From sequence record LR756508.1: a stretch of 64,000 nt of DNA; one strand, written 5' to 3'. Position numbers and translations under genes: made by a program. The notes under the pieces were generated by a model. It ran no database searches. It worked only from the letters and a program-made list of their open reading frames with translations, and was not told where the DNA came from. Below are positions 1,200 to 57,738 of this stretch, piece by piece; within the stretch, counting starts at the first letter, position 1, and the number at the start of each line of letters is the position of its first letter.

Positions 1200-1526
1200 A
1201 TGCAACTTTCCGAAGAAGAGCTTAGAAATATTGTAAGAGAAGAAGCAATTTACGGGGTCAAAGAAAAAGAGATTCTTGACTATTTGGAGGAAGAAATCTT
1301 GTCAATGTATGAGGACTATTCAACCGAGCGAAGCGGTGATCTTCTTCTCGTCAATGACGAAAAAGGAGAAACGTTTGAGATTGCGGTGAAAAAAGCTCTT
1401 GATGTGAACCCAACAGTAGAAGTTCGTTACAGTAAACTGGAAGACTCTAAGTATGCCAGTAGAAAAACGTTCTACCTAAGTCAAGTTGATGAGTTGAAGC
1501 ACACGTTGAAACACCGCCAGTTTTAA
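1200..1526 (+). CDS. Leader-bearing small protein (MQLSEEELRNIVREE)
   Basis: ORF 1188-1526; ATG at 1200 preferred because it starts the shared motif. Confidence 0.75.
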   Translation: MQLSEEELRNIVREEAIYGVKEKEILDYLEEEILSMYEDYSTERSGDLLLVNDEKGETFEIAVKKALDVNPTVEVRYSKLEDSKYASRKTFYLSQVDELKHTLKHRQF

Positions 1527-1558
1527 GCATTTAAAACTTTTTCTAAAAGAGATATCAC

Positions 1559-1828
1559 ATGAGGCTGAATAAAGAAATTATTAGGGGAGTAGTTGAGGAA
1601 GAACTTGCTGAAGTTAAACTTAGAAAGAAAGTAAGAGAGAAAGCTAAAGATATAATCAAGGAAAAAGAAAGAAGAAAAGCTGCTTCTCAGGCTCTTAATG
1701 GGATCCAGTCTAAAATCAAAGAGCAGAAGAAGAATATTCCAGATGAGTTTAAAGACTCTCTTGGTTCAGAACTTGATAAATTGAGTGAGAAAATTCAACA
1801 GTTGATGGGAGACTATAACCTAGAATAA
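1559..1828 (+). CDS. Leader-bearing small coiled-coil protein (MRLNKEIIRGVVEEELAE)
   Basis: 89 aa ORF with a variant of the shared motif. Confidence 0.7.
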   Translation: MRLNKEIIRGVVEEELAEVKLRKKVREKAKDIIKEKERRKAASQALNGIQSKIKEQKKNIPDEFKDSLGSELDKLSEKIQQLMGDYNLE

Positions 1829-1838
1829 AAAGAGTTAA

Positions 1839-3252
1839 TGAATGTCCAATAAATCCTGCGGCTTTAGCCGCAGGATGAATTGAACCACTTCTACATACAA
1901 CTAAGTTTTGTTTTTAGAATTTTCTTTTAAATCACATGAAACTGACGAAAACGTTGAAATTTAAGCTTGAAGACCTTTCAGGCCACGACAGGTACATTTT
2001 GAGTCAAACCCAGCTTCAGTTTCGGAAGTCCGTCAATTTCTATCTTCATCAAGTTGGAAATAGAGGTTCGACAAACGTAACTGATTACAAAGATGAGTAC
2101 GAGAAAGCGAGAGACATATTTCAACTAAATTCAGCTTTGATTCAGCAGTCGAAAAGGTTTGCGATAAACCAGTACAAGTCTTACAAGAACAACGAAAATA
2201 ATAAGAGCTTTCCACATTTTGAGTCTTTCGTTGACGTTCGGTATGATAACAGAACAATAACTTTCAAAGAAGAAAACGAAGAAACTTACGAGTTAAAAGT
2301 CACATTAGCTACAACCCAGAGCCGAGTTGAGGCCACGCTTCAAGGAGGCGAGTACTGTTTCGAGGAGTTTCAAGCTGGAGACTTTCAAGATGCTAGACTT
2401 TTTCGACAGGGTGGGGAATATTATCTGAACGTTCATATTCAAAGAGAAGCCGAAATTTCGAGAGCCAAAGAGTCTGAGTTCTACATCGGAATCGATCTTG
2501 GAGTTAACAACTTGGCGACGATTGCAGTTCAAAACAGGGATGGCGAGGTCGTTGAAACCAGGTTCTTCGACGGGTCTTATGTAAGCGAGAAGAAACGAAG
2601 ATTCAACGCCAAGCGCCGAGAATACATGCGAAAAGGTTTGTGGTCGAAGCTTCAAGAGACTCGCGGAAAGGAGAAGCGTTTTATCAAGGATGTTAACCAC
2701 AAAATCTCGAAATACGTCAAAGACTTATGCGAAAAATATGAAGACTCGACGGTTGTCATGGAGAACCTTGATGGCATTCGCAAGAGCATGAACTTTAGTT
2801 CTAAACAGAACAGAAGACTACACAACTGGAGCTTCGCGCAGCTTCAAGAGTTCATAATTTACAAAGCTCACGAAGCTGGAAGCTCCTACCGCAGAGTTCC
2901 ACCATTCAACACTTCTCAAGTTTGTGGGAGTTGCTTCAACTCCATTGATCGAAGTTCGAGAAACAAAGTTGTTGGAACTTGTGAAACCTGCAAGAAAGAG
3001 GTGTTGAACGTGGATCTCAACGCAGCAGTGAATATAATTCAACGTTTGTGGTATTACATAACTCGTGATTCTCACGAGAGCACTATACCAGAAACTGAGC
3101 TACGTGAATTTAGCTCGGAGGACTTGGAACCCACGTCCCATCAAGGAAGCGCCGACGGCAAAGCCGACACCGCTGCGGTTGATGCTACGCATCAACTCGT
3201 GTCGTCATTGAGTTTGAGCTTGCCTTGAAGCCTCCGTCTGGGGGTCATTCAC
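1839..3252 (+). mobile_element. IS200/IS605-family element carrying tnpB only (copy 1)
   Basis: Left end TTAA|tgaatgtccaat-AAAT-cctgcggctttagccgcagg hairpin; right end GAAG-cctccgtctggggg-tcat-TCAC; no tnpA. Confidence 0.85.
1936..3228 (+). CDS. tnpB: RNA-guided endonuclease TnpB
   Basis: RuvC-I YIGIDLGVNNLA, RuvC-II VVMENL, Zn finger CGSC..CETC, RuvC-III VDLNAAVNI; all catalytic residues are present. Confidence 0.93.
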   Translation: MKLTKTLKFKLEDLSGHDRYILSQTQLQFRKSVNFYLHQVGNRGSTNVTDYKDEYEKARDIFQLNSALIQQSKRFAINQYKSYKNNENNKSFPHFESFVDVRYDNRTITFKEENEETYELKVTLATTQSRVEATLQGGEYCFEEFQAGDFQDARLFRQGGEYYLNVHIQREAEISRAKESEFYIGIDLGVNNLATIAVQNRDGEVVETRFFDGSYVSEKKRRFNAKRREYMRKGLWSKLQETRGKEKRFIKDVNHKISKYVKDLCEKYEDSTVVMENLDGIRKSMNFSSKQNRRLHNWSFAQLQEFIIYKAHEAGSSYRRVPPFNTSQVCGSCFNSIDRSSRNKVVGTCETCKKEVLNVDLNAAVNIIQRLWYYITRDSHESTIPETELREFSSEDLEPTSHQGSADGKADTAAVDATHQLVSSLSLSLP

Positions 3253-3253: not shown

Positions 3254-3634
3254 ATGAAAATAAAAGAAAAGAAGTTGAGGAAAATTATCAATGAAGAAAT
3301 TCATGCTGTTTTAGAGAATAGTAATGACTGTTACTGGCGGAGCATTTCAAAAGACACTTCTGATAGTTCTTCAAATACCCTGACCGTAAAAGCAGAGCGT
3401 ATTGATATTCTTGAAGACGTCCTAAAAAGAGATGATTTGAACTCTTTGCTTGAAAAAATAAAAGCTGGAAAGAGAGGCGCTTACTATCGGGTTGAATTAA
3501 CAGAAGAAGAATCCGAAAAGATTGCAAGTGCAATCAAAAGTTACTTGGATTACGATTTTGCTAATTTGAGTTATGCAGACCAGAGGGCACTGGAATCTAT
3601 CTTAAACAATTTGCCGTATTTGATGCGATACTAA
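3254..3634 (+). CDS. Leader-bearing small protein (MKIKEKKLRKIINEEIHAVLE)
   Basis: 126 aa ORF with the shared N-terminal motif. Confidence 0.78.
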   Translation: MKIKEKKLRKIINEEIHAVLENSNDCYWRSISKDTSDSSSNTLTVKAERIDILEDVLKRDDLNSLLEKIKAGKRGAYYRVELTEEESEKIASAIKSYLDYDFANLSYADQRALESILNNLPYLMRY

Positions 3635-3654: not shown

Positions 3655-3951
3655 ATGAGATTAACTGAAAGACGTCTGAAAAAAATTGTAAAAGAAGAAA
3701 TAGATAAAGTTCTTCAAGAGGGAAGTTTTAGCGAAGTAGAAGTAGCTCTTACTGCTCCAACTGAAGCCGATTATGAATTGGAGCGAGTTGAGCGCGGATA
3801 CACAATACATGAAGCGTTTCATCACCTTAAAAAATGGGCAGAGGATAATGGTTATTCAGTTGAGTTGACTGGCGATGGAACTTCCGTCTGGGATTATACT
3901 TTTAGTAAAAATGGATCTGAGCAGTTTCTCACGGTTCTTCACGGAAGGTAA
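3655..3951 (+). CDS. Leader-bearing small protein (MRLTERRLKKIVKEEIDKVLQE)
   Basis: 98 aa ORF with the shared motif. Confidence 0.78.
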   Translation: MRLTERRLKKIVKEEIDKVLQEGSFSEVEVALTAPTEADYELERVERGYTIHEAFHHLKKWAEDNGYSVELTGDGTSVWDYTFSKNGSEQFLTVLHGR

Positions 3952-3968: not shown

Positions 3969-4265
3969 ATGGGTAATTCTATTCGAAAAGTTGTTAGGGA
4001 AGAAATCAAAAAAATGTTAAATGAACAAGAGCAAGACCTACCAGATTCAGTAGAGAGTTTTATCGGAACGTTTTCTGGTCTAGAAGTCAATGACGTTAAT
4101 ACTTATAATTTACTTCAATCTGGAAGCTCCAAAAATCTCTACGAGATTTATGTGGAGCCTGGAAGCCAGCTTGAGGTTCCAGTAAAAGATATTAAGGGAA
4201 TTTTTGAAATCGAGAAAGTAGCAAAGTATGGAGGTGAATTTTATATCTCCTTCTGGGGGCCTTAA
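3969..4265 (+). CDS. Leader-bearing small protein (MGNSIRKVVREEIKKMLNE)
   Basis: 98 aa ORF with the shared motif. Confidence 0.78.
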   Translation: MGNSIRKVVREEIKKMLNEQEQDLPDSVESFIGTFSGLEVNDVNTYNLLQSGSSKNLYEIYVEPGSQLEVPVKDIKGIFEIEKVAKYGGEFYISFWGP

Positions 4266-4290: not shown

Positions 4291-4743
4291 ATGAAACTTA
4301 CCCAGACAAAACTCCAGAAATTAATTAAAGAAGAACTGAAAGAAGTTTTCAGTTCAGGAGAGAGGAAAAGCGTAGTCAAAAAACTGATCTCTTTTCTTAA
4401 ATCGGGTGGCCTTCAAGTAAGCACTTCACGTCATTCTCGTGGCCTTTTTGAGGTTGGGCCGAGTGGGTTTCGGGTCGTAATTGAAGACCTAAAAGACGGG
4501 ACGAATAGGTCGGAAACTGGAGTTGTAGCCAAGTTTCCATCGCTTCAAAGTCGCATGGGGAAAGAGAAAAGAACAATTTGGGCTGGCGATTTAAAGACTT
4601 TAGCCAAGAAAATAAAAAAATATTATAATGAGTTCAAGTCTGAGCACGAGGTGAGTGATAATCAATTTGAGGATTGGATTGATGTTCAAGTTCAGCAGTC
4701 CTCAGGAACTGTAAGAAAACCGGTTAACAAACAGAGCCTTTAA
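4291..4743 (+). CDS. Leader-bearing protein (MKLTQTKLQKLIKEELKE)
   Basis: 150 aa ORF with the shared motif. Confidence 0.78.
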   Translation: MKLTQTKLQKLIKEELKEVFSSGERKSVVKKLISFLKSGGLQVSTSRHSRGLFEVGPSGFRVVIEDLKDGTNRSETGVVAKFPSLQSRMGKEKRTIWAGDLKTLAKKIKKYYNEFKSEHEVSDNQFEDWIDVQVQQSSGTVRKPVNKQSL

Positions 4744-5923: not shown

Positions 5924-6676
5924 GTGAGCGTAAGATTTAAACAGCTACTTTTTGAGGTATCTTCGGCAAATGTAGTAGCTACCTCTCTAAAAAAAGAGTT
6001 GACTCCCCATCTATTTCCAAAACGCTCATATGAGATGGACGCACTGAGTGAGATGGAGGATTTTGACTATGAGGATTATGTTGATTTCATGTGGAAAGAT
6101 ATAATTGATATAGGAAGTAGATCTATAAAACTTAGAATTAGAAATTACAGCAGACTGCCAGAATTTGAGAGTTTAAAAGGAAGGTCAGATAGAAAATACA
6201 AGGAGACTGCAGTAGGTTACTTCAATGATATAGTAAAAGAAAATGGCTGGCATGTAAGTAGCGTAAATAAAAGAAAAGAATTAAAAGTAGTCTTTCGTAA
6301 AAATGAGGGGGAGCGAGTTGAGGTTGAAGGTCCTCTATATCATGTGACTTACAAAGATGCAGTTGATAAAATCCTGCAGAACGGTTTGAAGCCGAAAGAA
6401 GGAAAAAATACGTCTTTTCTCTATCCAGAGCGAATTTACCTATTTACCGAGTACAACGAGAGTTTGTTTGAGAGATTTGTTATTGAGAAGTCAAATACAA
6501 ATGTTTCTCCCCAAAAAAGAATGGCAGGTGGAATAGCGAAACCACCTTATTCCATCCTTAAAGTCGAGGATGTTAAAGACTACACGTTTTATAAGGATAA
6601 CGACATAAAAAACTCGGTGTGGACAAATCAAAGCATTCCGGATAACAAAATAGAGCACTTAAAGACGAAAGATTAA
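5924..6676 (+). CDS. ADP-ribosyltransferase-fold (Tpt1/KptA/DarT-like HxT) protein with short leader
   Basis: LYHVTYKDAVDKILQNGLKP..RIYLF motif; N-terminus MSVRFKQLLFE. Confidence 0.65.
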   Translation: MSVRFKQLLFEVSSANVVATSLKKELTPHLFPKRSYEMDALSEMEDFDYEDYVDFMWKDIIDIGSRSIKLRIRNYSRLPEFESLKGRSDRKYKETAVGYFNDIVKENGWHVSSVNKRKELKVVFRKNEGERVEVEGPLYHVTYKDAVDKILQNGLKPKEGKNTSFLYPERIYLFTEYNESLFERFVIEKSNTNVSPQKRMAGGIAKPPYSILKVEDVKDYTFYKDNDIKNSVWTNQSIPDNKIEHLKTKD

Positions 6677-7404
6677 TGTATAGACTAACGAAGATCCTGA
6701 GAGAAGAGGTAGCTCCAGCCGAAATCGAAGAGCTTGACGGTATTGGTGAGGTAAAGTCTTACCTGAATGAGCTGAATATAGAATACGACACCGAAAACGT
6801 GAATCAAAGTGAGGTAATGGTTGTTGGAGATCCGAAAAAATATATCGTAGAGTTTGATGGAAAGTTTCCCGTCGTTTCGGAGATTGAACGGTTTCTAAAA
6901 GAAAAAAGTCGACCAGGAGATTTCTACGAGTTCACAGGCGTAGATTTTAGAGAATATTACACTAATTTATTCTGGGATAACGTCGGAAAAATTTCCGAGT
7001 TCAATGAACTTTACCACGCTACTAAGGAACAACATGCAGATAGTATTCTGAAAAACGGGTTAGAAGCCAGAAAAGAATCGCGCATTCCGATGAGCAGAAT
7101 TCATCGGCCCGCAGTCTTCACAGTCAAGGACCTCGGGTATCTCGCCGATGAGACGTATGGCTCGGCGGTGATAGTAATTGATACGATGAAAATGAAAAAA
7201 GATAGCTTTACTCCAGATGTTGGAAGAGAAAAAGATTTTGAAAGAAAAGATATGGCAGCCTACCTAATTGATGAGTTAAACCTATATATTCCTGTTGAGC
7301 AGATAGTTCAGGCAGGAAAGAGAGGAACTGGAAGCTGGCGAGGCACAGTTGCTATCTATTCTGACGTCCCGCCTAAATATATTACTCAATTTGATGGAAG
7401 TTGA
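6676..7404 (+). CDS. ADP-ribosyltransferase-fold (HxT) protein with short leader
   Basis: LYHATKEQHADSILKNGLEAR..AVFTV..YGSAVIVID; N-terminus MYRLTKILREE. Confidence 0.65.
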   Translation: MYRLTKILREEVAPAEIEELDGIGEVKSYLNELNIEYDTENVNQSEVMVVGDPKKYIVEFDGKFPVVSEIERFLKEKSRPGDFYEFTGVDFREYYTNLFWDNVGKISEFNELYHATKEQHADSILKNGLEARKESRIPMSRIHRPAVFTVKDLGYLADETYGSAVIVIDTMKMKKDSFTPDVGREKDFERKDMAAYLIDELNLYIPVEQIVQAGKRGTGSWRGTVAIYSDVPPKYITQFDGS

Positions 7405-8806: not shown

Positions 8807-9316
8807 ATGACTCTATCCGAAAGAAAGTTAAGAAGGATAGTCAAAGAGGAAATCAACAGAGTTTTAATGGAAGGCTGGGAAGATGAAACTGATAACCGTA
8901 GAGCAATAGGTTCAAAAGATACAGGGTCAGCAGTTACAGACAGGGAAGCGTATGATATTTCTAGGCAGTTTAGTTCTGCTTTCAATAAGCTAGATACGCT
9001 GCTGTATGATAAAAATAATAGACATTACGTAAAATCGAGCTCCGAACTAAAGAGAATGAAAAGTAAGATTCTCCGGGTTGCTAAGAAAGTTATTAATGGA
9101 GCGGAGAGTGCTCTTCGTGATGTGAAAAAGGCTGACGAAGGCCACTACCAGACGGAAGAAATCCGCGGAATGTTAGAAAAAATTATTGACAAAACCACGG
9201 ATTTGACTGGTTCACTTAAAGACAAATCTGGCGGTGATCCTCACGAAGCTGCAAGAGCAGTGCGGGCTAGCCATCAACACTACGACGAAATGAGCGGACC
9301 CGAATACTATAAATAA
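8807..9316 (+). CDS. Leader-bearing protein (MTLSERKLRRIVKEEINRVLME)
   Basis: 169 aa ORF with the shared motif. Confidence 0.8.
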   Translation: MTLSERKLRRIVKEEINRVLMEGWEDETDNRRAIGSKDTGSAVTDREAYDISRQFSSAFNKLDTLLYDKNNRHYVKSSSELKRMKSKILRVAKKVINGAESALRDVKKADEGHYQTEEIRGMLEKIIDKTTDLTGSLKDKSGGDPHEAARAVRASHQHYDEMSGPEYYK

Positions 9317-12164: not shown

Positions 12165-12298
12165 AAAATTTAATGGTGATTAGATGTTCCTATGTCTAAC
12201 ACAACTATACATATTGAGAAAAAGCTTCTGAGCTGGGTAAAAAAGATGATCATATTCTATTTATCGCTGAGTTTGCCATAAATTCTCCTTCTCTTTAC

Positions 12299-24312: not shown

Positions 24313-26652
24313 ATGGATTTTAACTATTCAAAAGAAGACATAGAGAGAATAGCAGAAGAGTGTCCTTCACTCGTGACGAGAAAAATAAAAGCACATGATA
24401 AGAAACTATATGAGCATGTGAGCAAAAACTTTAAAGGAGAGAAATTCACAGAGAAGCTTTTCCGATTTATGTATGGCAATGAAGCTTCTGTGTGTGATAT
24501 GAGGGATTGCGAAAATACTGTAAGTTTTTTAAGTTTCACTAGAGGATTCAAAGAGTTTTGTTCACGATCATGTGGAGCCAGAAAAAAAGGTTCAAAAGAA
24601 AACATTAAATGTTCCTACTGCGAAAAAGAGATAGATGTGTATAAGTCTGAAGACAAAAAATACTGTTCTCATGAATGCTACATAAAACACAGAAATCAAA
24701 AAGATGATTTTGATGAGCAGTTGAGAAAAGCTAATAGGTTATTTTGGGATGATGATATTGATGGAGATGTTGATAAAAAAGACATTATGCCTAAAGAAGA
24801 TATTAAAAAAATTGCAGAAAAACATGAAACTCATTTGCTACGGAGAATTAAATCTGCCTCTCTTGAAACGAAAGCTTTTATCGATAACAATATTAGTGGA
24901 GAAACGTTTGTAGAGAAAGTATATCGATTTGTTTATAATGATATTACCGATGAGTGTGATATAGATGGCTGCGATAACACTTGCTCTTTTAAATCTTTTT
25001 CTGAAGGATATAAAGACTTCTGCTCAATAGATTGCGTCATTAAATCAAATGATTACTCGGCTATAAGAGATAAAGCTAAGTCTACGCTTCAAAAACGGTA
25101 TGGAGTCGACCATCCGGCTAAAATGGAAGATTATGAGGAAAAGGTAAAAAAGACGAAAGAAGAGCGATATGGTGATCCAAATTATAACAATATCGAGCAG
25201 ATGAAGAAGACTTGCCAAAACAAATATGGTGGCGTTGGTTTTGCCTCCGATAGACTAAAAGAAAAAGTGAGAGAGACATGTAGAGATGTATATGGTGATC
25301 CTGATTATAAAAACAGGAATAAAGCCATGAAGACTATTAGAGAAAGGTATGGTCAAAAAATTCCCCCTAAGGCTTTAGAAAAATTAAAAGAGAGGTTGGA
25401 AAAGGGTGAAGTTGGTTTTGGTTCAGATAATTATCTGAATTCAATACGCGAAAAATATGGGAGAGAAGATATTGAAAACATTTCGCAGGTTGAAGAGATT
25501 AAAAATAAAAAAAGGAGAAATCGTTTGAAGAAAAAATACAAAAAACTTTTCGAGAGCCCCAAATTTTCTGATAAGATAAAACCATTATTCTCCTTTGAAG
25601 ATTACGAAGGCGTTTACTTGGAAGATAATGAACAAACAACACCGAGATACCCATTCAAATGTAAAAAATGTGATACAGAGTTCGAGGACTATTTGAATTC
25701 TGGTCATGTTCCAAGATGTCCTGAGTGTGATCCGAAAATGTGTAAACGATCAAATGCAGAAGAAGAAATAACTGCTTTTATAGAGAAGATCTTACCAGAA
25801 GATCAAGAAGTAGTTAAAAACGATAAGTCGGTTCTAGACGGAAAAGAACTCGACATCTACACCCCTGGCAAAAATATAGCAATCGAGTATAACGGTTTAT
25901 ACTGGCACAGCGAGACCCAGGGAGGAAAAGACAGGTATTACCATTTAAACAAGACGGAAGAATGCGAAGACCAGGGAATCCAGCTTATTCACATTTTTGG
26001 AAACGAGTGGAGAGACAAACCTGATGTAATTAAAAGAAGGCTCCGTCACATTCTTGGATGCTCTAACCAAGATTCTATTTATGCCAGGAACTGCACAGTA
26101 AAAGAAATAGACAGGAAAGCGAAGTCCCGTTTCCTAAAAAAATATCACCTGCAGGGAGCAGGTGCTTCTCGCATAAAACTTGGGCTTTTTCACGGCGAGT
26201 TTTTTAACAGCGATTTGGTAGGTGTGATGACTTTTGGAACCCCAAGCGTTGCGCAGGGTCACAAGGAAAATAAAAGAAAACAGTGGGAAATGAAGCGTTT
26301 TGCCTTATCGAAACCTGTTGTGGGAGGAACGGGAAAGCTTTTTAAGCACTTTGTACGAAGCTACGATGCGCCGAGAGTGAAAACGTATGCCGATAGGCGT
26401 TGGAGCACGAAAATCGATAACGTGTATGAAAAGATTGGATTTGAGTATATTGGATCAAGCAATCCAAACTATTATTATTTTCACAAAGAAAATCCAATTT
26501 TGAAACACAGATTTAATTTTCGAAAAGACCAGTTGGACGACAAACTTAAAAACTTCGATCCAAACTTAACTGAATGGGAGAATATGCAGAGGCACGATTA
26601 CGACAGGATTTGGGACTGCGGCCACCTAAAATACATCTGGGAAGCTGACTAA
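24313..26652 (+). CDS. Same endonuclease family (paralog 2) with duplicated N-terminal Zn module
   Basis: ATG at 24313. Two copies of KEDI..IAE..GE.F.EK..RF.Y..C..C..F.SF..G.K.FCS..C; ELDIYTPGKNIAIEYNGLYWHS; YADRRWS. Confidence 0.75.
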   Translation: MDFNYSKEDIERIAEECPSLVTRKIKAHDKKLYEHVSKNFKGEKFTEKLFRFMYGNEASVCDMRDCENTVSFLSFTRGFKEFCSRSCGARKKGSKENIKCSYCEKEIDVYKSEDKKYCSHECYIKHRNQKDDFDEQLRKANRLFWDDDIDGDVDKKDIMPKEDIKKIAEKHETHLLRRIKSASLETKAFIDNNISGETFVEKVYRFVYNDITDECDIDGCDNTCSFKSFSEGYKDFCSIDCVIKSNDYSAIRDKAKSTLQKRYGVDHPAKMEDYEEKVKKTKEERYGDPNYNNIEQMKKTCQNKYGGVGFASDRLKEKVRETCRDVYGDPDYKNRNKAMKTIRERYGQKIPPKALEKLKERLEKGEVGFGSDNYLNSIREKYGREDIENISQVEEIKNKKRRNRLKKKYKKLFESPKFSDKIKPLFSFEDYEGVYLEDNEQTTPRYPFKCKKCDTEFEDYLNSGHVPRCPECDPKMCKRSNAEEEITAFIEKILPEDQEVVKNDKSVLDGKELDIYTPGKNIAIEYNGLYWHSETQGGKDRYYHLNKTEECEDQGIQLIHIFGNEWRDKPDVIKRRLRHILGCSNQDSIYARNCTVKEIDRKAKSRFLKKYHLQGAGASRIKLGLFHGEFFNSDLVGVMTFGTPSVAQGHKENKRKQWEMKRFALSKPVVGGTGKLFKHFVRSYDAPRVKTYADRRWSTKIDNVYEKIGFEYIGSSNPNYYYFHKENPILKHRFNFRKDQLDDKLKNFDPNLTEWENMQRHDYDRIWDCGHLKYIWEAD

Positions 26653-32832: not shown

Positions 32833-33294
32833 ATGGAAAAAAGAATAGAAAAGTTTGTAGACTATATTCGAGATTATCTTCGAAGACAAGACGCTAACAG
32901 CACAAATAAAGGTAAAATTAATCGTTTGCTTAAAAATGAGTTTGGAAGTCAAGCTGTTCGCTCCCGAGATCCACAAAAAGTTGTTAACGTGCTAAAGAAG
33001 GATGGAATTTTAACTCACGACTCGGACTCCTTTGGAAGCTACGATTACTACGTTCATCTGAGCGAGCAGAACGGCCTCCGACAAATTGTTCGAGAGGAGC
33101 TAAAAAACATTCTATCCGAGCAGGGCCGAGGACATCTTCCTAGCCAAGCCCAGCAACACATTAAAGACGCTCAGTATAATCTCGATCAAGCGAAAGGGGA
33201 GCTTCTCGGAACCGATTTCGAAGACTCTCAAATCTACGACGACCTCGCAAAAGCAGACCGAATTCTCAAATCCTACATTGACCAAATGAGATAA
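32833..33294 (+). CDS. Protein with an internal leader copy
   Basis: GLRQIVREELKNILSE at nt 33073-33120. Confidence 0.72.
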   Translation: MEKRIEKFVDYIRDYLRRQDANSTNKGKINRLLKNEFGSQAVRSRDPQKVVNVLKKDGILTHDSDSFGSYDYYVHLSEQNGLRQIVREELKNILSEQGRGHLPSQAQQHIKDAQYNLDQAKGELLGTDFEDSQIYDDLAKADRILKSYIDQMR

Positions 33295-33297: not shown

Positions 33298-33555
33298 ATG
33301 AGACTAAAAGAAAGCCAACTAAGAAACGTTATACGTCAGGAGATTCAAAACGCTTTGACCGAAGATGATGATGGAGCGCTAAACCCCTGCATGTACTGCG
33401 GCTCTTCTGCCGAAAGGGCCAGAGATTATGCGCGGTCGGGCAAAACCACGATGATGGTAAGGTGCTCGAACGTGAACGACTGTCCAAATTGGACGGCAGT
33501 TGGCGCAAAAACACGGAGCGAAGCAGGTCAAGCCTGGAATGAGCTTCACTCTTAA
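33298..33555 (+). CDS. Leader fused to a Lar/Ral-like restriction-alleviation Zn domain
   Basis: MRLKESQLRNVIRQEIQNALTE, then LNPCMYCG..VRC..C..EA..AWN, the Lar-family signature. Confidence 0.7.
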   Translation: MRLKESQLRNVIRQEIQNALTEDDDGALNPCMYCGSSAERARDYARSGKTTMMVRCSNVNDCPNWTAVGAKTRSEAGQAWNELHS

Positions 33556-33569: not shown

Positions 33570-33812
33570 ATGAAAGTTTCTGCAGACACACTAAGAAAAA
33601 TAATTAAGGAGGAAACAAGAGACCTGCTTAACGAAAAAGACAAATTCGATGGGCAGTCTGGAAACACTCTTCGCGTAAAAAAGAGAGCTTATCGCCAGGG
33701 AAGTGGCGTTGGGGGGATAATGATAAGCATAGAAGATGGTGGCAGGCCAGTGTTTCTAACAACGGATCAAGCTGGGAAGCTGAAGAATGCTATTGAGATG
33801 AAAACAAATTAG
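33570..33812 (+). CDS. Leader-bearing small protein (MKVSADTLRKIIKEETRDLLNE)
   Basis: ATG at 33570 begins the shared motif. Confidence 0.75.
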   Translation: MKVSADTLRKIIKEETRDLLNEKDKFDGQSGNTLRVKKRAYRQGSGVGGIMISIEDGGRPVFLTTDQAGKLKNAIEMKTN

Positions 33813-34077: not shown

Positions 34078-34647
34078 ATGAAGCTACAAAATATCTTATA
34101 TGAGTCTGAGATCGTAAAAGAAAAACACGATCTTTCTGGCGCACCAGAAGAATTTGAAGTTCCAGATGTTAGCTCTAGCGCTAACAAGTTTAAAAATCCA
34201 AACGAAGTTGATCTCGGAGCCGTGAACTTTCTGGATACTGGTCCAGAGGGATGGGAAGCAGATGCCAACTCAAAAACGGCGAGTGCAGTAACGCTCGTTG
34301 ACGTCAAGGACGCAAAAAAACTGGAGGGAAAAATGAGGGAAAACAGAAAGTGGCACAAAAGAGAAGGCGAATGGTGGTTTGGCAATTTTCCACTCAAGAG
34401 CGAGGATGAAAATGTAACAACCTGGCAAAAATTTGTGAATGACATAGCCGAAAATGGCCTGGACTGGCCTATTACTGTATCGGTAACAAAATGGGGTGAA
34501 GCATTTCTGAGAGAAGGAAACCATCGCCTGGCAGTTTATGATCTTCTCGATATTCAACAAATACCCACTCATATCTGGTGGTGGGGAAACGTCCAAGGAA
34601 CGAAGCGTGATCCAATGAAAGAATACTTCGAAAAGGCATTTGAGTAA
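34078..34647 (+). CDS. ParB/Sulfiredoxin-like N-terminal domain protein with short leader MKLQNILYE
   Basis: DIAENGLDWPITV..FLREGNHRLAVY..IP, the ParB/Srx GxxR motif. Confidence 0.7.
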   Translation: MKLQNILYESEIVKEKHDLSGAPEEFEVPDVSSSANKFKNPNEVDLGAVNFLDTGPEGWEADANSKTASAVTLVDVKDAKKLEGKMRENRKWHKREGEWWFGNFPLKSEDENVTTWQKFVNDIAENGLDWPITVSVTKWGEAFLREGNHRLAVYDLLDIQQIPTHIWWWGNVQGTKRDPMKEYFEKAFE

Positions 34648-34726: not shown

Positions 34727-35584
34727 ATGATGAAAAAAAATTCTTCAAAAAAGCTCCAAAGAATTATTCTGGAGGAGTTAAGAAAATATAATCGAGATCG
34801 AGAGCTACTAAGCGAGTCTGGATTTCAACCAAGAAGTTCCCTCAAAAACTTTCAAAGGCAACGCAAAGGGATGATGTCAAACCTCATGGGAGGCGGCCCG
34901 AGCAGACCATCTACTCCCATGGAACAAGACTTTGGATGGAACCCACCTGAAGTCGATGAGTTTGATGGAAAATACCAGCTTGCAGAGAGTAGCAGTTTCA
35001 CAAATGGAAAAAGTGTTATAACTGAAAACGAGTCTGGCGTCGAGTCGACCTCTGAAGCTCAAATTGTAATCAGCACAAGCGATGCGAAAAGCTGCAGGCG
35101 AGCAGAAAATCATAAAAATTTGTGGAGAATAGTTCAAGGAAAAGGCTGGTACTTCGGGAAATATCCGTTAAATGAACGCGAAGACGAAGAAGTTTACTCG
35201 TGGAGAAAAATAATAAATGAGTTGGCGGAAAATGGTCCAAAAAAGCCAATCGAAATCCACGTCTGGTATAACGGTGAAGCAAAACTTTATGAAAGTAAAT
35301 ACGGAGCTGCGGCCTACGACATGCTTGGAATTCCACAGGTTCCCGCTCACATCAAATGGTTTGGGGGATCAGGTGGAACCGAAAGAGACGAGTTAAAAGA
35401 ATATTACCAAAGAGCTTTCCTCCCTAAAAATGCCAATAGTTTAGATCAATATTTTGATGGCGTAGACGGAGTGAACTTCGTAAGTGATAAGAAAAGAGTG
35501 AACTGGGTTGATGGAGACTCCGAGGTTCCTACCAGCCCTGCCGAAGCTTTGAAGACAGGAAACTACAAGGAGGGAAATATCTAA
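34727..35584 (+). CDS. Tandem paralog of the previous gene with the catalytic motif lost; long leader
   Basis: Aligns over W[WY]FG.[FY]PL..W....[DE][IL]AENG...PI...GEA, but EGNHR is replaced by ESKYG; starts KKLQRIILEELRKY..LLSE. Confidence 0.65.
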   Translation: MMKKNSSKKLQRIILEELRKYNRDRELLSESGFQPRSSLKNFQRQRKGMMSNLMGGGPSRPSTPMEQDFGWNPPEVDEFDGKYQLAESSSFTNGKSVITENESGVESTSEAQIVISTSDAKSCRRAENHKNLWRIVQGKGWYFGKYPLNEREDEEVYSWRKIINELAENGPKKPIEIHVWYNGEAKLYESKYGAAAYDMLGIPQVPAHIKWFGGSGGTERDELKEYYQRAFLPKNANSLDQYFDGVDGVNFVSDKKRVNWVDGDSEVPTSPAEALKTGNYKEGNI

Positions 35585-36438
35585 TGGTAAAATTCAAGTC
35601 ACTTCTTTTTGAGTCAGATCGTTTTGATGACCTATCAAAACCTGAAAAAGATGAAAAAGTTGAAGACTTAAAAAACCAGTTGAATACTGGCAACTGGATT
35701 GTAAAGGAGCCACTTCTTTATCGGGGAAGAGAGTGGGATGGTTTAATGAAAGTAAAAGACTCCGAGCGCTACGAAAAAAGAGAGCCCAGAGACACCAAAC
35801 TGCACTACGATTATCTAATTCATCACTTCACAGTTAACTGTTATCCAAACCTTCCTGACAGAAGAAAAAGTCGCTTCGCTTTGACTCATTTCGGAGATAC
35901 AAACATTTTCGGCGATGAGACCTATGTAATTTTCCCTCATAAGGATGCTAAAATTGCTTACTCTTACATGGATCCTTATGATTTTATAGTTGACATGCCG
36001 AAAAGAAAACAGGGTTTCATAAAAGGGTTAAAACCTTTTTTTAAAGATGGCAAGGAAAAAACATCACTTTATAAGAAATACGAAGATCAGATTTCAAAAG
36101 AGGTTAAAAACCTTATGTCTGACCTTTATGACGTTTATAATGGCAGTGAAATGCCTCTTTCACGTTACGGATGTCCCGAAGAAATCCTTGAAATGCTGAA
36201 CAATGAGTTGGATAAATTCAACGGAGACGAGCCTGGAGAGATTCGAAAAGTTATTTCGGGACTTAGCAATCTGATATGGATTTTTGAATCTGTTGTTTTA
36301 GAATATTTCGAAATTTTTAATACTGGGTATCCAGAGAATAAAGATATGGGAGCGGGAGAGGTTCTATATCAAGGAAAGTACCTGCAGGTTCATCGAGACC
36401 TGTTTGTGTTCGCTAAAGAAGAAAACGAGATAACATAA
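35584..36438 (+). CDS. Short-leader protein (MVKFKSLLFE), LYRG..REPRDT family, possible ART fold
   Basis: Paralog of 27179-27964. Confidence 0.5.
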   Translation: MVKFKSLLFESDRFDDLSKPEKDEKVEDLKNQLNTGNWIVKEPLLYRGREWDGLMKVKDSERYEKREPRDTKLHYDYLIHHFTVNCYPNLPDRRKSRFALTHFGDTNIFGDETYVIFPHKDAKIAYSYMDPYDFIVDMPKRKQGFIKGLKPFFKDGKEKTSLYKKYEDQISKEVKNLMSDLYDVYNGSEMPLSRYGCPEEILEMLNNELDKFNGDEPGEIRKVISGLSNLIWIFESVVLEYFEIFNTGYPENKDMGAGEVLYQGKYLQVHRDLFVFAKEENEIT

Positions 36439-37148: not shown

Positions 37149-38411
37149 ATGCAGAAACTGCAGGACTTACTTTTTGAGGCGGTTTCTCCACTTCTATATC
37201 ACGTTACCGATCTTGGAAGAGCAGTCAATATTTTAAAAGAAGATAAGTTCCGTCTAACGCCTGCTTTTGGAACTGGAAGTGACATGGAAAAACAAAAAGG
37301 CAAGCTTTACTTTCTTAGCACTTCGCGTATAAAGTATGGAGGATACACGAGAAGTCTATCAGACGAAGGATACGTGAATATGGAGCTAGATGGCCGAAAG
37401 TTAGGTCACAACTATCAATCTGTTAACGTTGATTACTGGGATGGAGAATTTAGAGATGTTGCCTGGCAGAAAGGAGACATGCAGCAGTTTTTAAGGTATG
37501 ATGAAAACGAAGAAAGAATTATCACCGACGACGCAGAAATTAAACCAGCCACAAAATATATTAAGTCGCTGCACGTAATAGTGGGAGAAGACGTCAAACA
37601 AAGAAAGAAAAAGAAATACAAGAAACTAGAAAAGTTAGCTAAGAAAAATAGAGTCGAAATACATTTCTACACAAATCCAAAGCACTGGAAAAGGCAGTGG
37701 GAAGAAAAAGCTGATAGTTCAGTTTCTGAAATGTTTGGAGAAATTGAAGGAGAGTATGAAGATGCTGGTACTCCGAGAGTTTATGGGACTCCGACTTATA
37801 TTACGGGTGCGGTAGAATTATTCAAAGCAGACAGCCTGGAAGACTTGCCTGAAGATGGGCAGGAAATGTTCAAAAAACTAAAGAATAGCACTCCTCATAA
37901 CTTTGAGAACGTTCTTAAGAACAAAATTCATAATAACAAGTCAAACCCGAAGGTTCTCGATGACATAAAGTTTCTGGCTGGAAAAATGAAGCAGGAAGGA
38001 AAAAACAGTATAAGTGGCCTTATTGAAATTCTTTCACAAGAGGTAAAAGAACTTCAAAAGCAAGACTTGGATGGGTTGAAAAGAAAATATGACAGTTTAG
38101 TTAAAGCTATTCTTGACTTCTATAACATAAAAGATAAACCTGAACCTTCGGAGAAGGACCTAAATAGAAAAGGGCACTTGGATGCTATAATCAAACACTT
38201 TTCTTTTGATAAGGGGAAGCCTAAAGAATGGGATAACCAGAGAACAAACAAAGCTCTGGAAGCTGTCAATGACATAGAAAGACTTCTTAGCGTTGGATTT
38301 TTTGATAATCTGCAGAAAGTTTTAGAGAAAGAAAACCGAGATCACGACCTGCTTAATTTCATTCATGAAGTCATTCAGCCAGTTGTGAGAAGGGTGATCG
38401 ATAATCTTTAA
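37149..38411 (+). CDS. ART-fold candidate (H-S-E type) with short leader MQKLQDLLFE and helical C-terminal half
   Basis: LLYHVT..NILKE..YFLSTSR..ELDG..ENEERI. Confidence 0.55.
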   Translation: MQKLQDLLFEAVSPLLYHVTDLGRAVNILKEDKFRLTPAFGTGSDMEKQKGKLYFLSTSRIKYGGYTRSLSDEGYVNMELDGRKLGHNYQSVNVDYWDGEFRDVAWQKGDMQQFLRYDENEERIITDDAEIKPATKYIKSLHVIVGEDVKQRKKKKYKKLEKLAKKNRVEIHFYTNPKHWKRQWEEKADSSVSEMFGEIEGEYEDAGTPRVYGTPTYITGAVELFKADSLEDLPEDGQEMFKKLKNSTPHNFENVLKNKIHNNKSNPKVLDDIKFLAGKMKQEGKNSISGLIEILSQEVKELQKQDLDGLKRKYDSLVKAILDFYNIKDKPEPSEKDLNRKGHLDAIIKHFSFDKGKPKEWDNQRTNKALEAVNDIERLLSVGFFDNLQKVLEKENRDHDLLNFIHEVIQPVVRRVIDNL

Positions 38412-40223: not shown

Positions 40224-40541
40224 ACATGACGTTCAAGAAAGCCTCTGTGGCTTTAACCGCAGGATAAATTGTACTAATAAGAACAATAAAATGAAGACAG
40301 AAAACGACCAGATACAGTGGCAAGAACGCTGGTTTTGGAAAGTATGTCGGGGAAACCCGTCTACCTGGAGTCCATGGCGTCTCCCAGGAAAGCTCGGCAA
40401 GCTCAAGCGAGTTCAAGAGTTTTCATGTAGCTCGCGGAGTGGAAACCTCTGCAGGTCAAGTTTCTGCTAAGAACGCGAGAAAGATTGTTTTGAAGATAAC
40501 CGAGACAAGAATCTCTTCCCTTTGGCGAAGAGAGGCGTCAA
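40224..40541 (+). mobile_element. Complete non-autonomous IS200/IS605-type element (no tnpA or tnpB), second copy of the 1-224 type
   Basis: TTAC|acatgacgttcaag-AAAG-cctctgtggctttaaccgcagg left end; GAAT-ctcttccctttggcgaagagag-gcg-TCAA right end. Confidence 0.8.
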
Positions 40542-56277: not shown

Positions 56278-56335
56278 AGATGTTGAGTTTTTCTCCTGTA
56301 CATATCAGTGGTTTCAATAACAGATTTGATGGAAA

Positions 56336-57412
56336 ATGGACGTAGATTTAAATAAAATACTTCTTGAATGGTCTTACAGGGTTGACAAGGGCTACCCGAG
56401 GATTACAAAAGAAGAAGACCTTCGGGTTCTAAATAATATTATTACCGAATGGTACGATAAAAAAATAGCCGATGCACTTCTTGAAAACATCGAAAGTTCT
56501 ATTTCGGAAGTTTCGCTCGGGTTAAATAATTCCTCGCTCCGACACGAAAACGAGCACAAAAAGTATACAAAAAGGCTAATAAAGAAGCTCAAGTCTGGAG
56601 GAACCCTCACACTTGAGCGAAAAGTTCAGTATACTGAAGAAAGCGAGGAAGATAGTAATGTAATCACGATTCCTGAAGGAGCGGAGGTAAAAGTTGATGT
56701 TAGCGACGATTTGATTGGAAAGCTCGTTGCTGGACTTCGCGGCGTTCTAAAGCACGGACCTGATTTTCCAGAAGAGAGTGAGAAAGCCCAGAAGGCACTT
56801 AAAAAAGCAGAAAAGGTCTTTACAAAAGACGACGGGTCATATAGAAGGATCATTCCCGTAAAGTATAAAGATTCAAAGGTTTTGATTAAACTAAGTGACG
56901 TGTCGAAAAGCACTGTTACAGACGAAGATGAAGGTCAAGATACGGATTTTTCCCCAAGTGAAGAGGAAGGTGGTGAAGATGAGAATCAGGGGGGAGACCA
57001 GCCTAAAGAAGATTCTGAAGGAGAAAAAAAGGTTTCAGAAAACGAAAACTCAAACGAAGACGAAGAATTTAGACTTCCAGATGGAGTAGTCGAGTATTTT
57101 GGCGACTCGTATTCAGATGGCCCAGAAAATCCTGATGTTATGGAAGAAGACGACGATGATCCATCGAAATATGTGGATCGTAGAGACGACGGCAAGGATG
57201 ACAAATATCCAGATAGAGGGTATAAAGAGTTTGATCCGAAAAGCGACGAAGAGGAAGAAGAAAGCGATGATGATTATCGGCACGATAAGGGCAGCGAAGA
57301 AAGCCCACCTCAAGACGAAGAGGCTGCTGAGCAGGATGCAGAAGAGACTACAGAAGAGTTGAATAGGATCGCAGAGAAACGTGAAGTTTATAAATTTAAT
57401 ATTAAAGTTTAG
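56336..57412 (+). CDS. Hypothetical protein with short-leader variant (LNKILLE) and acidic low-complexity C-terminus
   Basis: 358 aa ORF. Confidence 0.65.
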   Translation: MDVDLNKILLEWSYRVDKGYPRITKEEDLRVLNNIITEWYDKKIADALLENIESSISEVSLGLNNSSLRHENEHKKYTKRLIKKLKSGGTLTLERKVQYTEESEEDSNVITIPEGAEVKVDVSDDLIGKLVAGLRGVLKHGPDFPEESEKAQKALKKAEKVFTKDDGSYRRIIPVKYKDSKVLIKLSDVSKSTVTDEDEGQDTDFSPSEEEGGEDENQGGDQPKEDSEGEKKVSENENSNEDEEFRLPDGVVEYFGDSYSDGPENPDVMEEDDDDPSKYVDRRDDGKDDKYPDRGYKEFDPKSDEEEEESDDDYRHDKGSEESPPQDEEAAEQDAEETTEELNRIAEKREVYKFNIKV

Positions 57413-57423
57413 CGAGAAAACTC

Positions 57424-57738
57424 ATGAGACTGACAGAGTCTAAATTGAAAAAACTGGTTTTAAATGAACTTCAGCGATACCTGACCGAAGACGAAGCCAT
57501 TGATTCAAAATATCTGCGTGACCACCTCGATTATTTTATCGAAGGTGATTTTACCAATGAAGACGAGAAAAAATACTTGAAGTGGTTGAAAAGTTTAATT
57601 CAACAGTTGCATCCCGACGACGACCTAACAAAAGAAGATGTTTTTGAACTAACTCGCACCGACTTTCGTTTTCCGAACGAAGTTGTAGAAAAGGTCGACT
57701 ACTATACACTGATTAATCAGATCTGGAAACAAATTTAG
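57424..57738 (+). CDS. Leader-bearing small protein (MRLTESKLKKLVLNELQRYLTE)
   Basis: Isolated leader gene inside the replication block. Confidence 0.78.
   Translation: MRLTESKLKKLVLNELQRYLTEDEAIDSKYLRDHLDYFIEGDFTNEDEKKYLKWLKSLIQQLHPDDDLTKEDVFELTRTDFRFPNEVVEKVDYYTLINQIWKQI

What the first reader, a model, noticed from the sequence alone, without database searches (positions are those of the whole stretch)
1200..57738. Shared leader peptide on about 28 unrelated ORFs: candidate capsid-targeting code for virion-packaged effectors
Seen: 18 ORFs carry a motif like M[RK][LI][TS]Ex[KR]L[RK]x[IV][VI][KR]EE[IL]xxxLxE (261 internal, 1200, 1559, 3254, 3655, 3969, 4291, 4857, 5464, 8332, 8807, 32098, 32833 internal, 33298, 33570, 33852, 34727, 57424). 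Ten more begin with a shorter [KR]LxxLLxE form. The sequence after the motif is unrelated between genes. The codons differ synonymously (8332 vs 8807), so conservation is at the peptide level. Known: T4 internal proteins are packaged via a 10-aa capsid-targeting sequence, and the gp21 prohead protease cuts after (I/L)-x-E. Inference: this phage has a large, modular leader-plus-cargo repertoire that is packaged in the head, trimmed at LxE and injected with the DNA.
Basis: partly seen in the sequence, partly recalled or inferred. Interest (0 to 1): 0.92.

Follow-up and report, generated by a model that had tools for sequence, protein, structure and literature searches.

The report
Shared N-terminal helix on phage ORFs
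A 484-kb T4-related phage puts the same 22-residue N-terminal helix on about 29 otherwise unrelated small proteins, many beside its head-maturation protease gene, which fits a T4-style capsid-loading tag, though nothing yet shows that these proteins are packaged.

Summary
The motif is real and far beyond chance. A profile built from it finds 29 copies in the whole genome (LR756508.1, 484 kb; 16 in the window), none in reversed or shuffled translations. Conservation is at the peptide level, and the sequence after the motif shows no BLAST similarity. Two of the 18 listed ORFs (1559, 5464) fail. The short form is also real (42 N-termini against 1.4 expected), but 16 of its bearers genome-wide are one paralogous family.

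The leader is not private to this phage. 765 protein clusters and at least 94 viral contigs carry it, all seen in one uncultured T4-related lineage near Flavobacterium phage immuto and Microcystis phage Mel-JY01. Cargo is hypervariable: 176 of 208 are singletons.

Support for the capsid-loading reading:
- A gp21-type protease lies 30 kb upstream of the window.
- Twelve of 29 leaders flank it, in 6.5% of the genome.
- The capsid protein's LLKE|A aligns with T4's cleavage site.
- Both leader forms share the same hydrophobic-hydrophobic-x-Glu core.

Against it: no virion data exist, many leader genes sit elsewhere, and no cargo looks like an effector.

Best reading is a T4-type targeting propeptide of a new sequence family and on a larger scale, at about 0.42 confidence.

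The parts
1200..1526 (+). Long-form leader ORF (108 aa); leader = first 22 codons, 1200-1265
   Evidence: HMM 31.4 bits, i-E 6e-8; no Pfam family
3254..3634 (+). Long-form leader ORF (126 aa)
   Evidence: HMM 32.5 bits; no Pfam or PHROG family
3655..3951 (+). Long-form leader ORF (98 aa)
   Evidence: HMM 34.8 bits. AF2 gives a helix at residues 5-22, a low-confidence stretch at 23-49, then a small alpha/beta domain; mean pLDDT 58
3969..4265 (+). Long-form leader ORF (98 aa), N-terminally shortened leader
   Evidence: HMM 18.1 bits, i-E 1e-3
4291..4743 (+). Long-form leader ORF (150 aa)
   Evidence: HMM 30.9 bits
4857..5108 (+). Long-form leader ORF (83 aa from the ATG at 4857; an upstream GTG at 4779 is less likely to be the start)
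   Evidence: HMM 39.1 bits, the best in the genome
8332..8742 (+). Long-form leader ORF (136 aa)
   Evidence: HMM 32.8 bits; 11 synonymous codon differences from the 8807 leader
8807..9316 (+). Long-form leader ORF (169 aa)
   Evidence: HMM 32.6 bits
32098..32817 (+). Weak long-form leader ORF (239 aa), shortened N-terminus
   Evidence: HMM 13.1 bits, i-E 0.036
32833..33294 (+). ORF (153 aa) with an internal copy of the motif at about 33055-33120
   Evidence: HMM 21.6 bits at residues 82-96
33298..33555 (+). Long-form leader ORF (85 aa)
   Evidence: HMM 36.6 bits; sub-threshold Lar-like Pfam hit, E 0.007
33570..33812 (+). Long-form leader ORF (80 aa)
   Evidence: HMM 34.1 bits
33852..34025 (+). 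Long-form leader ORF (57 aa): leader plus a 30-aa Cys motif
   Evidence: HMM 36.0 bits; the C-terminal motif hits 8 PHROGs of unknown function, best 1.3e-9
34727..35584 (+). Very weak leader-like N-terminus (285 aa)
   Evidence: HMM 11.2 bits, i-E 0.14
57424..57738 (+). Long-form leader ORF (104 aa)
   Evidence: HMM 32.5 bits
261..1139 (+). ORF (292 aa) with a weak internal copy at about 753-818
   Evidence: HMM 13.0 bits at residues 167-186
5924..6676 (+). Short-form N-terminus (FKQLLFE) on a Tpt1/ART-like protein (250 aa)
   Evidence: Regex hit; weak Pfam PTS_2-RNA hit
6676..7404 (+). Looser short-form N-terminus (LTKILREE) on a Tpt1/ART-like protein (242 aa)
   Evidence: Seen by eye; weak Pfam PTS_2-RNA hit, E 0.016
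26652..27179 (+). Short-form N-terminus (LKKLLVE), 175 aa
   Evidence: Regex hit
27179..27964 (+). Short-form N-terminus (LKKLLVE) on a member of the 16-copy paralog family (261 aa)
   Evidence: only 4 database relatives; AF2 failed, pLDDT 39
27967..28401 (+). Short-form-like N-terminus (LYRILKE) directly before a Tpt1/ART-type domain (144 aa)
   Evidence: Pfam PTS_2-RNA 6e-5, ART-PolyVal 0.011, PARP 0.011
34078..34647 (+). Short-form N-terminus (LQNILYE), 189 aa
   Evidence: Regex hit
35584..36438 (+). Short-form N-terminus (FKSLLFE) on a member of the 16-copy paralog family (284 aa)
37149..38411 (+). Short-form N-terminus (LQDLLFE), 420 aa
   Evidence: Regex hit

Best explanation
The leader is a lineage-specific N-terminal targeting propeptide of the T4 kind.

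Proposed mechanism:
1. An amphipathic helix (residues about 5-22, basic first half, acidic second half) docks the newly made protein onto the scaffolding core of the prohead. The short form is the same core motif placed nearer the N-terminus.
2. The gp21-type head-maturation protease then cuts after a hydrophobic-hydrophobic-x-Glu site inside or at the end of the leader: I-[IV]-[KR]-E14 and/or [VL]-L-x-E22 in the long form, L-L-x-E9 in the short form.
3. This frees a small, fast-evolving cargo protein inside the head.

Shown: the motif and its N-terminal position, selection at the peptide level, hypervariable cargo, the protease gene, clustering around that gene, and a conserved cleavage-type motif in capsid protein, putative scaffold and protease.

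Inferred: binding to the core, cleavage, presence in virions, and any ejection into or function in the host.
For: 1. The window is part of LR756508.1. That genome has T4-like TerL, portal, gp21-type protease and gp23.
2. 12 of 29 leader genes lie in the TerL-to-MCP interval, which is 6.5% of the genome (binomial p 1e-7). Six sit just upstream and four just downstream of the protease gene. This is where T4 keeps its core genes 67 and 68.
3. The same arrangement (leader ORF, gp21, leader ORFs, acidic scaffold, gp23) recurs in related marine contigs.
4. T4's gp23 site LTE65|A aligns with LLKE|A here and with [LI]-x-E|[AS] in relatives. The 5-mer LLKEA occurs only twice in the genome, in the MCP and in the acidic putative scaffold. 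The protease has VIKES at residue 20. The most conserved part of both leader forms has the same hydrophobic-hydrophobic-x-E shape.
5. Cargo is extremely diverse under a constant leader: 208 leader ORFs fall into 189 clusters, 176 of them singletons. Reviews describe this for T4 internal proteins, with propeptides of 10-19 residues removed at L/I-x-E. They also report that Alt has a C-terminal propeptide as well, which would accommodate the C-terminal copies seen here.
6. Where the cargo has a recognisable domain, the leader is an add-on in front of it: Tpt1/ART-like at window 27967, and a P-loop ATPase in L040.
7. AF2 places a helix at residues 5-22 followed by a low-confidence linker.
Against: - No proteomic or biochemical data exist for any leader protein. 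No cultured phage with the full leader was found.
- 17 of 29 leader genes lie outside the head module. In relatives, leader arrays sit next to the primase gene.
- Much of the head-gene association in public contigs is a detection bias of short viral contigs: 75% for contigs under 15 kb, but only 25% for slices of contigs of 30 kb or more.
- The residue after the putative cut is Glu or Asp/Gly in the leaders, but Ala/Ser in MCP, scaffold and protease.
- The leader is conserved over 22 residues, more than T4's 10-residue signal needs.
- It shows no detectable similarity to T4's head-region proteins.
- Cargo is mildly acidic like other small ORFs, not basic like T4's internal proteins.
- ORFs directly upstream of TerL often carry the leader. 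If these are small terminase subunits, a head-interior destination would not fit them.
- About 56 tagged genes is a very large load.
Confidence: 0.42

Rival explanations
1. The helix is a shared interaction or oligomerisation module of a fast-evolving, lineage-specific family of small cytoplasmic accessory proteins, for example host take-over or anti-defence proteins that all bind one common partner or pair with each other. The proteins are not packaged and the helix is not removed.
For: - The genes come in tandem arrays, as expected from duplication and divergence.
- Most leader genes lie outside the head module, and in relatives they sit next to replication genes.
- A few copies are internal or C-terminal.
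- The helix is dipolar, basic then acidic, and amphipathic, which suits antiparallel pairing.
- 22 residues are conserved, more than a cleavable tag needs.
Against: - It does not explain the sevenfold enrichment around the protease gene.
- It does not explain the match of the conserved core to the MCP and scaffold cleavage-type motif.
- It does not explain the strict start at Met in 153 of 155 copies.
- It does not explain the restriction to a lineage with a gp21-type protease.
Confidence: 0.3
2. The leader proteins are disposable prohead-core or scaffold-accessory components, like T4 gp67, gp68 and gp22. They co-assemble through the helix, are chopped up by the protease and leave the head before DNA enters. 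Under this reading there is no delivered cargo and no effector function.
For: - The genes sit where T4 has genes 67 and 68, between portal and protease, and in front of the scaffold gene.
- No cargo has a recognisable domain.
- Cargo is poorly constrained.
- T4 core proteins are cut into fragments that leave the head.
Against: - There is no sequence similarity to T4 gp67, gp68 or gp22.
- Some cargoes are predicted to fold or carry enzyme-like domains.
- Close orthologues keep the cargo at 83-94% identity.
- Dozens of different filler proteins per genome seem unnecessary.
Confidence: 0.15
3. The conservation is at the DNA or RNA level (a repeated promoter, a translation-start element or a recombination site), and the peptide motif is a by-product.
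For: At the DNA level the leader regions are 61-80% identical (families D6, D9, D15). Three leader genes share TTAATATT about 29 nt upstream.
Against: - Synonymous sites are nearly saturated: 44.9% same codon against 39.1% expected.
- Upstream DNA is not conserved.
- Leu and Arg use all their codon families.
- The promoter-motif searches gave nothing specific.
Confidence: 0.02

Closest known systems
Capsid targeting sequences (CTS) of T4 internal proteins IPI, IPII, IPIII and of the varied internal proteins of other T-even phages
   Same: - N-terminal tag on otherwise unrelated, fast-evolving small proteins.
- Host genome encodes a gp21-family protease.
- The tag contains or ends in L/I-x-E.
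- Genes are partly in and partly outside the head module.
   Different: - The long form is a 22-residue conserved helix, against 10-19 residues in T4. Only the short form has T4-like length.
- No sequence relation to T4 head-region proteins was found. T4's own CTS letters were not compared.
- The scale is about 29 plus about 27 genes per genome, against 3-4 in T4.
- Cargo is not basic.
- Packaging and cleavage are untested.
T4 Alt, an ADP-ribosyltransferase carried in the head with N- and C-terminal propeptides removed by gp21
   Same: Several short-form ORFs have weak ART/Tpt1-type matches. Some proteins here have a C-terminal copy of the motif, echoing Alt's two propeptides.
   Different: phmmer with T4 Alt finds nothing in this genome. 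The ART-like hits are of the Tpt1/PARP type and lie below Pfam thresholds.
T4 prohead core proteins gp67 and gp68
   Same: Small genes between the portal and protease genes.
   Different: No detectable homology. There are many more genes here, and they are not conserved between related phages.
Propeptides and ejection proteins of giant phiKZ-like phages such as SPN3US
   Same: A large head with many internal proteins, several of them processed by the prohead protease (abstracts of PMC7411985 and PMC10052503).
   Different: It is a different phage lineage. I know of no shared N-terminal tag across many proteins reported there, and none was found in the papers searched.
Cargo-loading peptides of encapsulins (own knowledge, not tested here)
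   Same: A short conserved peptide directs varied cargo to the interior of an HK97-fold shell.
   Different: They are usually C-terminal, are not cleaved, and there is no protease step.

Membership tests
T4-type capsid targeting propeptide (CTS) | Sits at the extreme N-terminus of the precursor | tested here: met
   Most copies in this genome (21 of the 29 printed) and 153 of 155 in related contigs have Met at profile position 1. Four copies are internal or C-terminal.
T4-type capsid targeting propeptide (CTS) | Short propeptide, 10-19 residues in T4 internal proteins (7-65 over all gp21 substrates) | tested here: inconclusive
   The short form would give 9-11 residues. The long form would give 14 residues if cut after E14, or 22 if cut after E22. 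The real cut site is unknown.
T4-type capsid targeting propeptide (CTS) | Ends at a gp21 site, L/I-x-E | tested here: met
   I12-x-E14 is present in 73% of this genome's copies by E14 (E15 95%) and 97-98% in relatives. L20-x-E22 is present in 65-69% of this genome's copies, and E22 in 43% of an unbiased set. This holds at the motif level only; cleavage is not shown.
T4-type capsid targeting propeptide (CTS) | Genome encodes a gp21-family prohead protease whose specificity is kept | tested here: met
   Protease at record 156,480-158,204. The MCP site LLKE|A aligns with T4's LTE65|A. LLKEA also occurs in the putative scaffold and VIKES in the protease.
T4-type capsid targeting propeptide (CTS) | Conserved tag on divergent cargo | tested here: met
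   Leader identity is 38.5% against 5.8% downstream. 176 of 208 cargoes are BLAST singletons.
T4-type capsid targeting propeptide (CTS) | Sequence similarity to the T4 CTS itself | not tested
   T4 internal-protein sequences were not fetched or compared. The leader HMM finds nothing in T4's head-gene region.
T4-type capsid targeting propeptide (CTS) | Protein found in prohead and virion with the tag removed; tag sufficient to load a foreign protein | not testable with these tools
   Needs virion mass spectrometry and fusion experiments.
T4 prohead core proteins gp67, gp68 and scaffold gp22 | Sequence homology | tested here: not met
   phmmer with T4 gp67, gp68 and gp22 gives no hit at E up to 1 in this genome or in 120 related loci.
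T4 prohead core proteins gp67, gp68 and scaffold gp22 | Gene position between portal and protease, or between protease and MCP | tested here: met
   Record 152.4-155.8 kb and 160.5-162.8 kb flank the protease gene. The same holds in L068 and other contigs.
T4 Alt-type packaged ADP-ribosyltransferase | Homology to Alt | tested here: not met
   phmmer with T4 Alt gives no hit. There are only weak Tpt1, PARP and ART-PolyVal Pfam hits for window 5924, 6676 and 27967.
Sec or Tat secretion signal peptide | Hydrophobic core of about 10-20 residues after a basic N-region | tested here: not met
   The consensus alternates charged and hydrophobic residues and has no uninterrupted hydrophobic stretch. 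This was judged by inspection; no predictor was run.

The most novel reading that the evidence does not exclude
A whole lineage of T4-related marine phages uses a modular capsid-loading code. It has two classes: a 22-residue helix and a roughly 10-residue short form with the same hydrophobic-hydrophobic-x-Glu core. In a 484-kb member it has expanded to about 56 genes, about 9% of its ORFs. Under this reading the leader alone would identify the packaged, and perhaps injected, protein repertoire of uncultured phages from sequence. It would also offer a new tag for loading foreign proteins into large capsids.
Probability: 0.3. Interest if true: 0.85.

Novelty: new variant of a known kind. Interest (0 to 1): 0.68.

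Why it matters
Proteins carried inside phage heads and delivered with the DNA are the first weapons a phage uses against host defences. They are known in only a few cultured phages and cannot be recognised from sequence.

If this leader is a capsid-loading tag, it would mark such proteins directly in metagenomes. It would show that huge phages devote a sizeable share of their genes to head cargo. It would extend the T4 targeting principle to a distant lineage with a different, longer signal.

A cultured relative, Flavobacterium phage immuto, carries a shortened version of the motif on at least five proteins. The idea can therefore be tested at the bench now.

If the tag turns out not to be for packaging, an unexplained, strongly conserved 22-residue module on hundreds of otherwise unrelated viral proteins still needs a function.

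Tried and rejected
- Chance or low complexity: rejected. Reversed and shuffled controls give 0 hits.
- A DNA-level element: rejected by codon analysis.
- Promoter hunt: 8-mer enrichment and TTTAATATTAA-like or TATAAATA searches upstream of ORFs gave nothing that separates leader or structural genes from the rest.
- Pfam and PHROGs on leader ORFs of the window, of relatives and of 148 public leader proteins: no family covers the leader, and almost none covers the cargo.
- tblastn of 23-residue consensus leaders against 50,697 phage records: only the source record, or nothing. Short queries are insensitive.
A hand-made degenerate DNA pattern replaced it.
- Scan of bacterial and archaeal genomes with that pattern: the first 120 hits are almost all an internal stretch of a conserved Flavobacteriia protein that looks like the queuosine-pathway enzyme QueD (my reading of the sequence), not the leader. 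Only L171 and L232 are real leaders, probably phage contigs binned into MAGs.
- Word-indexed protein search restricted to residues 1-40: returned only three orthologues.
- AF2 of the short-form paralog family: pLDDT 39, unusable.
- AF2 of the 3655 ORF: pLDDT 58. Foldseek against viral models gave no match with E at or below 0.001 and TM below 0.5.
- T4 Alt, gp67, gp68 and gp22 as phmmer queries: no relatives.
- Cargo charge and composition: not different from other small ORFs.
- A 'second viral group' with leader arrays next to the primase gene: it is the same lineage seen in another genome region.
- Literature: no paper holds the leader strings or the accession number.

Full report
**Where the window comes from**

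A RecA/UvsX-like protein of the window is 100% identical to part of LR756508.1, an unannotated 484,177-bp 'uncultured phage' assembly. The window is record positions 186,001-250,000. The window itself holds:
- tail sheath (two paralogs), tail tube and baseplate hub;
- gp32-like, UvsX-like, RNase H-like and DnaB-like genes;
- two TnpB elements and several homing-endonuclease-like genes.

Yes. A profile HMM seeded with nine window N-termini and iterated on six-frame translations of the genome converges on 17, 23 and 29 domains at i-E below 1e-5, 1e-3 and 0.1. Reversed and shuffled translations give none, and all hits are on the + strand.

- 11 are strong, at 31-39 bits;
- 2 are moderate;
- 3 are weak;
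- 2 (1559 and 5464) are not supported.

Most copies start at Met. A few are internal (window 753 and 33055) or C-terminal (record 152,773 and 182,597).

The consensus is M-[KR]-[LI]-[TS]-E-x-[KR]-L-[RK]-x-[ILV]-[VI]-[RK]-E-E-[IL]-x-x-[VLI]-L-x-E, followed by an acidic, Gly/Pro-rich stretch.

Selection acts on the peptide:
- Identical residues share a codon in 44.9% of pairs, against 39.1% expected from codon usage.
- The 8332 and 8807 leaders differ at 11 synonymous codons.
- The DNA upstream of the start codons is not conserved.

Leader identity averages 38.5% and falls to 5.8% in the next 21 residues. The 27 post-leader regions show no blastp similarity to one another.

**The short form**

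The pattern [LFIMV][KRQ]x[LIV][LIV]xE starting at residues 2-8 occurs in 42 of 608 ORFs, against 1.35 expected from its internal frequency. 29 of these are not long-form members. So it is a real N-terminal feature.

Its bearers are not unrelated, however:
- 16 form one BLAST-linked family of 240-285 residues with several conserved blocks.
- That family has relatives only in two close relatives of this phage.
- Window 5924, 6676 and 27967 share weak Tpt1, PARP and ART-PolyVal hits.

The short motif is the same core as the centre of the long one: L-K-x-I-I-x-E against F-K-x-L-L-x-E.

**The leader is not private to this phage**

A 32-column profile of 11 window leaders, run against 1.84 billion representative proteins, finds 765 at E of 0.001 or better. 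The best hits are hypothetical proteins from marine metagenomes (GOS, Tara, ENA, JGI) with consensus MKITKSQLKQIIKEEL..VL.E. Many have two or three modules fused in one ORF. None of 148 of them matches a Pfam family.

- 94 were confirmed by the HMM.
- 41 had two or more copies, up to five per slice of about 10 kb.
- 153 of 155 copies start at Met.

In bacterial and archaeal genomes the same pattern hit, almost exclusively, an unrelated conserved Flavobacteriia protein that looks like QueD. Only two loci carried true leaders.

By portal similarity these contigs belong with Microcystis phage Mel-JY01, Flavobacterium phage immuto, this huge phage and, more distantly, Rhodothermus phage RM378. Contigs that at first looked like a second virus type (tail-like genes, RuvC-like gene, primase, then leader arrays) are the same lineage seen in another genome region.

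Across 208 leader ORFs from this genome and the contigs, cargo falls into 189 blastp clusters, 176 of them singletons. Even genes at the same position next to the protease gene are not conserved.

Cultured immuto has only a shortened, weaker version: gp176 MKKSQLREIIRKEL at E 0.005, and also gp175, gp190, gp156 and gp198. T4's head region has none. No paper in the library contains the motif strings or the accession number.

**Tests of the capsid-targeting idea**

1. Protease. phmmer with T4 head proteins finds the following in this genome:
   - TerL at 141,950;
   - portal at 147,044;
   - a gp21-type protease at 156,480-158,204, at E 3e-18. PHROG 'head maturation protease' matches at 1.8e-49 in two stretches, so the gene appears to be interrupted;
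   - gp23-type MCP at 171,904.

   All of these lie upstream of the window.
2. Position. 12 of 29 leaders lie between TerL and MCP, which is 6.5% of the genome (p 1e-7). Six are just upstream and four just downstream of the protease gene. The same layout recurs in marine contigs. In L068 the order is leader ORF, gp21, three leader ORFs, acidic scaffold, gp23.

   Caveat: in public data the link to head genes is inflated by how short viral contigs are recognised. It is 75% for contigs under 15 kb, and 25% for slices of contigs of 30 kb or more. I estimate roughly 13% by chance.
3. Cleavage motif.
   - T4's gp23 maturation site LTE65|A aligns with LLKE|A in this MCP and with [LI]-x-E|[AS] in seven relatives.
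   - LLKEA occurs only twice in the genome: there, and at residue 25 of the very acidic ORF just upstream of the MCP, which is the likely scaffold.
   - The protease has VIKES at residue 20.
   - The invariant centre of the long leader (I-[IV]-[KR]-E-E), its end ([VL]-L-x-E) and the short form (L-L-x-E) have the same shape. The following residue differs, though: Glu or Asp/Gly in the leaders, Ala/Ser in the canonical substrates.
4. Known biology. Reviews state that T4 internal proteins have 10-19-residue N-terminal propeptides. These target them to the scaffolding core and are removed by gp21 at L/I-x-E. The mature parts are highly diverse. Alt has propeptides at both ends.
5. Structure. AF2 of the 3655 ORF gives a helix at residues 5-22, a low-confidence stretch at 23-49 and a small alpha/beta domain. 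Mean pLDDT is only 58. The helix is amphipathic and dipolar.
6. Add-on character. Where a domain is recognisable, the leader lies in front of it.

**What speaks against it**

- Nothing shows packaging, cleavage or injection.
- Most leader genes are outside the head module.
- Some copies are internal.
- ORFs directly upstream of TerL, the usual place of the small terminase, often carry the leader and match no family.
- Cargo is not basic and shows no effector-type domain.
- There is no homology to T4 gp67, gp68, gp22 or Alt.
- The promoter searches could not tell whether leader genes are expressed with the late genes.

**Conclusion**

The best-supported reading is a T4-type targeting propeptide of a new sequence family, used on a much larger scale, at confidence about 0.42. 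The main rival is a shared interaction helix on non-packaged accessory proteins, at 0.3. A third possibility is disposable core components, at 0.15.

'Effector' is not supported by anything found here. The feature is a new variant of a known kind. It appears to be undescribed, and it is testable in a cultured relative.

Noticed in passing
window 1834-3238 and 12294-13697; remnant ends at 19361-19407 and 19625-19726: Two TnpB (OrfB_IS605 / Cas12f-like TNB) elements, 71-86% identical. They share a hairpin-bearing left end (CCTGCGGCTTTAGCCGCAGG) and a conserved right end. A third site keeps only the two ends, between the two tail sheath genes.
   Followed up: partly
window 3-179 and 40324-40493: A non-coding element of about 180 nt is repeated at 85-91% identity. 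It has no Rfam match. One copy follows a homing-endonuclease-like ORF; the other sits downstream of a terminase-like fragment at record 184,952. It may be part of an intron or another mobile element.
   Followed up: partly
window 22538-24307, 24265-26652, 30515-32035, 38465-40198: Four paralogous large ORFs with DUF7487 and Mom-like Pfam hits and shared DNA blocks are scattered among tail genes. An ORF that starts similarly at record 158,244 matches PHROG 'homing endonuclease' at 7e-134.
   Followed up: partly
window 9339-12164 (- strand): The only large minus-strand gene is a 941-aa SNF2-type helicase-like ORF. It appears to carry an intein-like insertion (Cys...His-Asn boundaries seen by reading the sequence). 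Not tested with a family search.
   Followed up: no
record 147,044-149,923 and 156,480-158,204 (outside the window, L003/L004): The portal (959 aa) and prohead protease (574 aa) are much longer than their T4 counterparts. The protease matches its family in two separated stretches, which suggests inteins or other insertions in essential head genes.
   Followed up: partly
window 16463-18937 and 19952-22426: Two tail sheath paralogs of identical length (824 aa) sit side by side.
   Followed up: no
window 46764-51503: A 1579-aa ORF contains at least 13 diverged copies of a 51-nt (17-residue) acidic repeat. A 1602-aa ORF lies next to it at 41950-46758.
   Followed up: no
window 33852-34025: After its leader, the 57-aa ORF consists of a Cys-Trp...Val-Pro-Asn-Cys-Val-Pro motif. 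That motif matches the C-terminal parts of eight PHROG families of unknown function, best E 1.3e-9.
   Followed up: no
window 27179-27964, 35584-36438, and 14 more copies across LR756508.1: A family of at least 16 paralogs of 240-285 aa has conserved blocks ([YFW]-R-G; R-x-P-R-D-T; P-x-R-x-x-S-x-F-A; C-terminal E-V-x-x-x-G-x-x-Y-L). It has no Pfam or PHROG match and was found only in this phage and two close relatives.
   Followed up: partly
window 5924-7404 and 27967-28401: Three ORFs have weak Tpt1/KptA, PARP and ART-PolyVal matches. They are candidate ADP-ribosyltransferase-fold or RNA 2'-phosphotransferase-fold proteins.
   Followed up: partly
whole window, upstream of start codons: No Shine-Dalgarno-like sequence is visible upstream of the leader genes; the spacers are A/T-rich. 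Together with the closest cultured relatives infecting Flavobacterium, this hints at a Bacteroidota host.
   Followed up: no
L068 4374-4604; Mel-JY01 record 22,183-22,410: Relatives carry a ribosomal protein S21-like gene inside the head-assembly module, between the protease and scaffold genes.
   Followed up: no
L040 11861-14114 (- strand): A related marine contig also has three ORFs starting MIKLKDL[IL]xE (short form) next to five long-form leader ORFs. One of the three is a P-loop ATPase/kinase. The two leader forms therefore travel together outside this genome too.
   Followed up: partly
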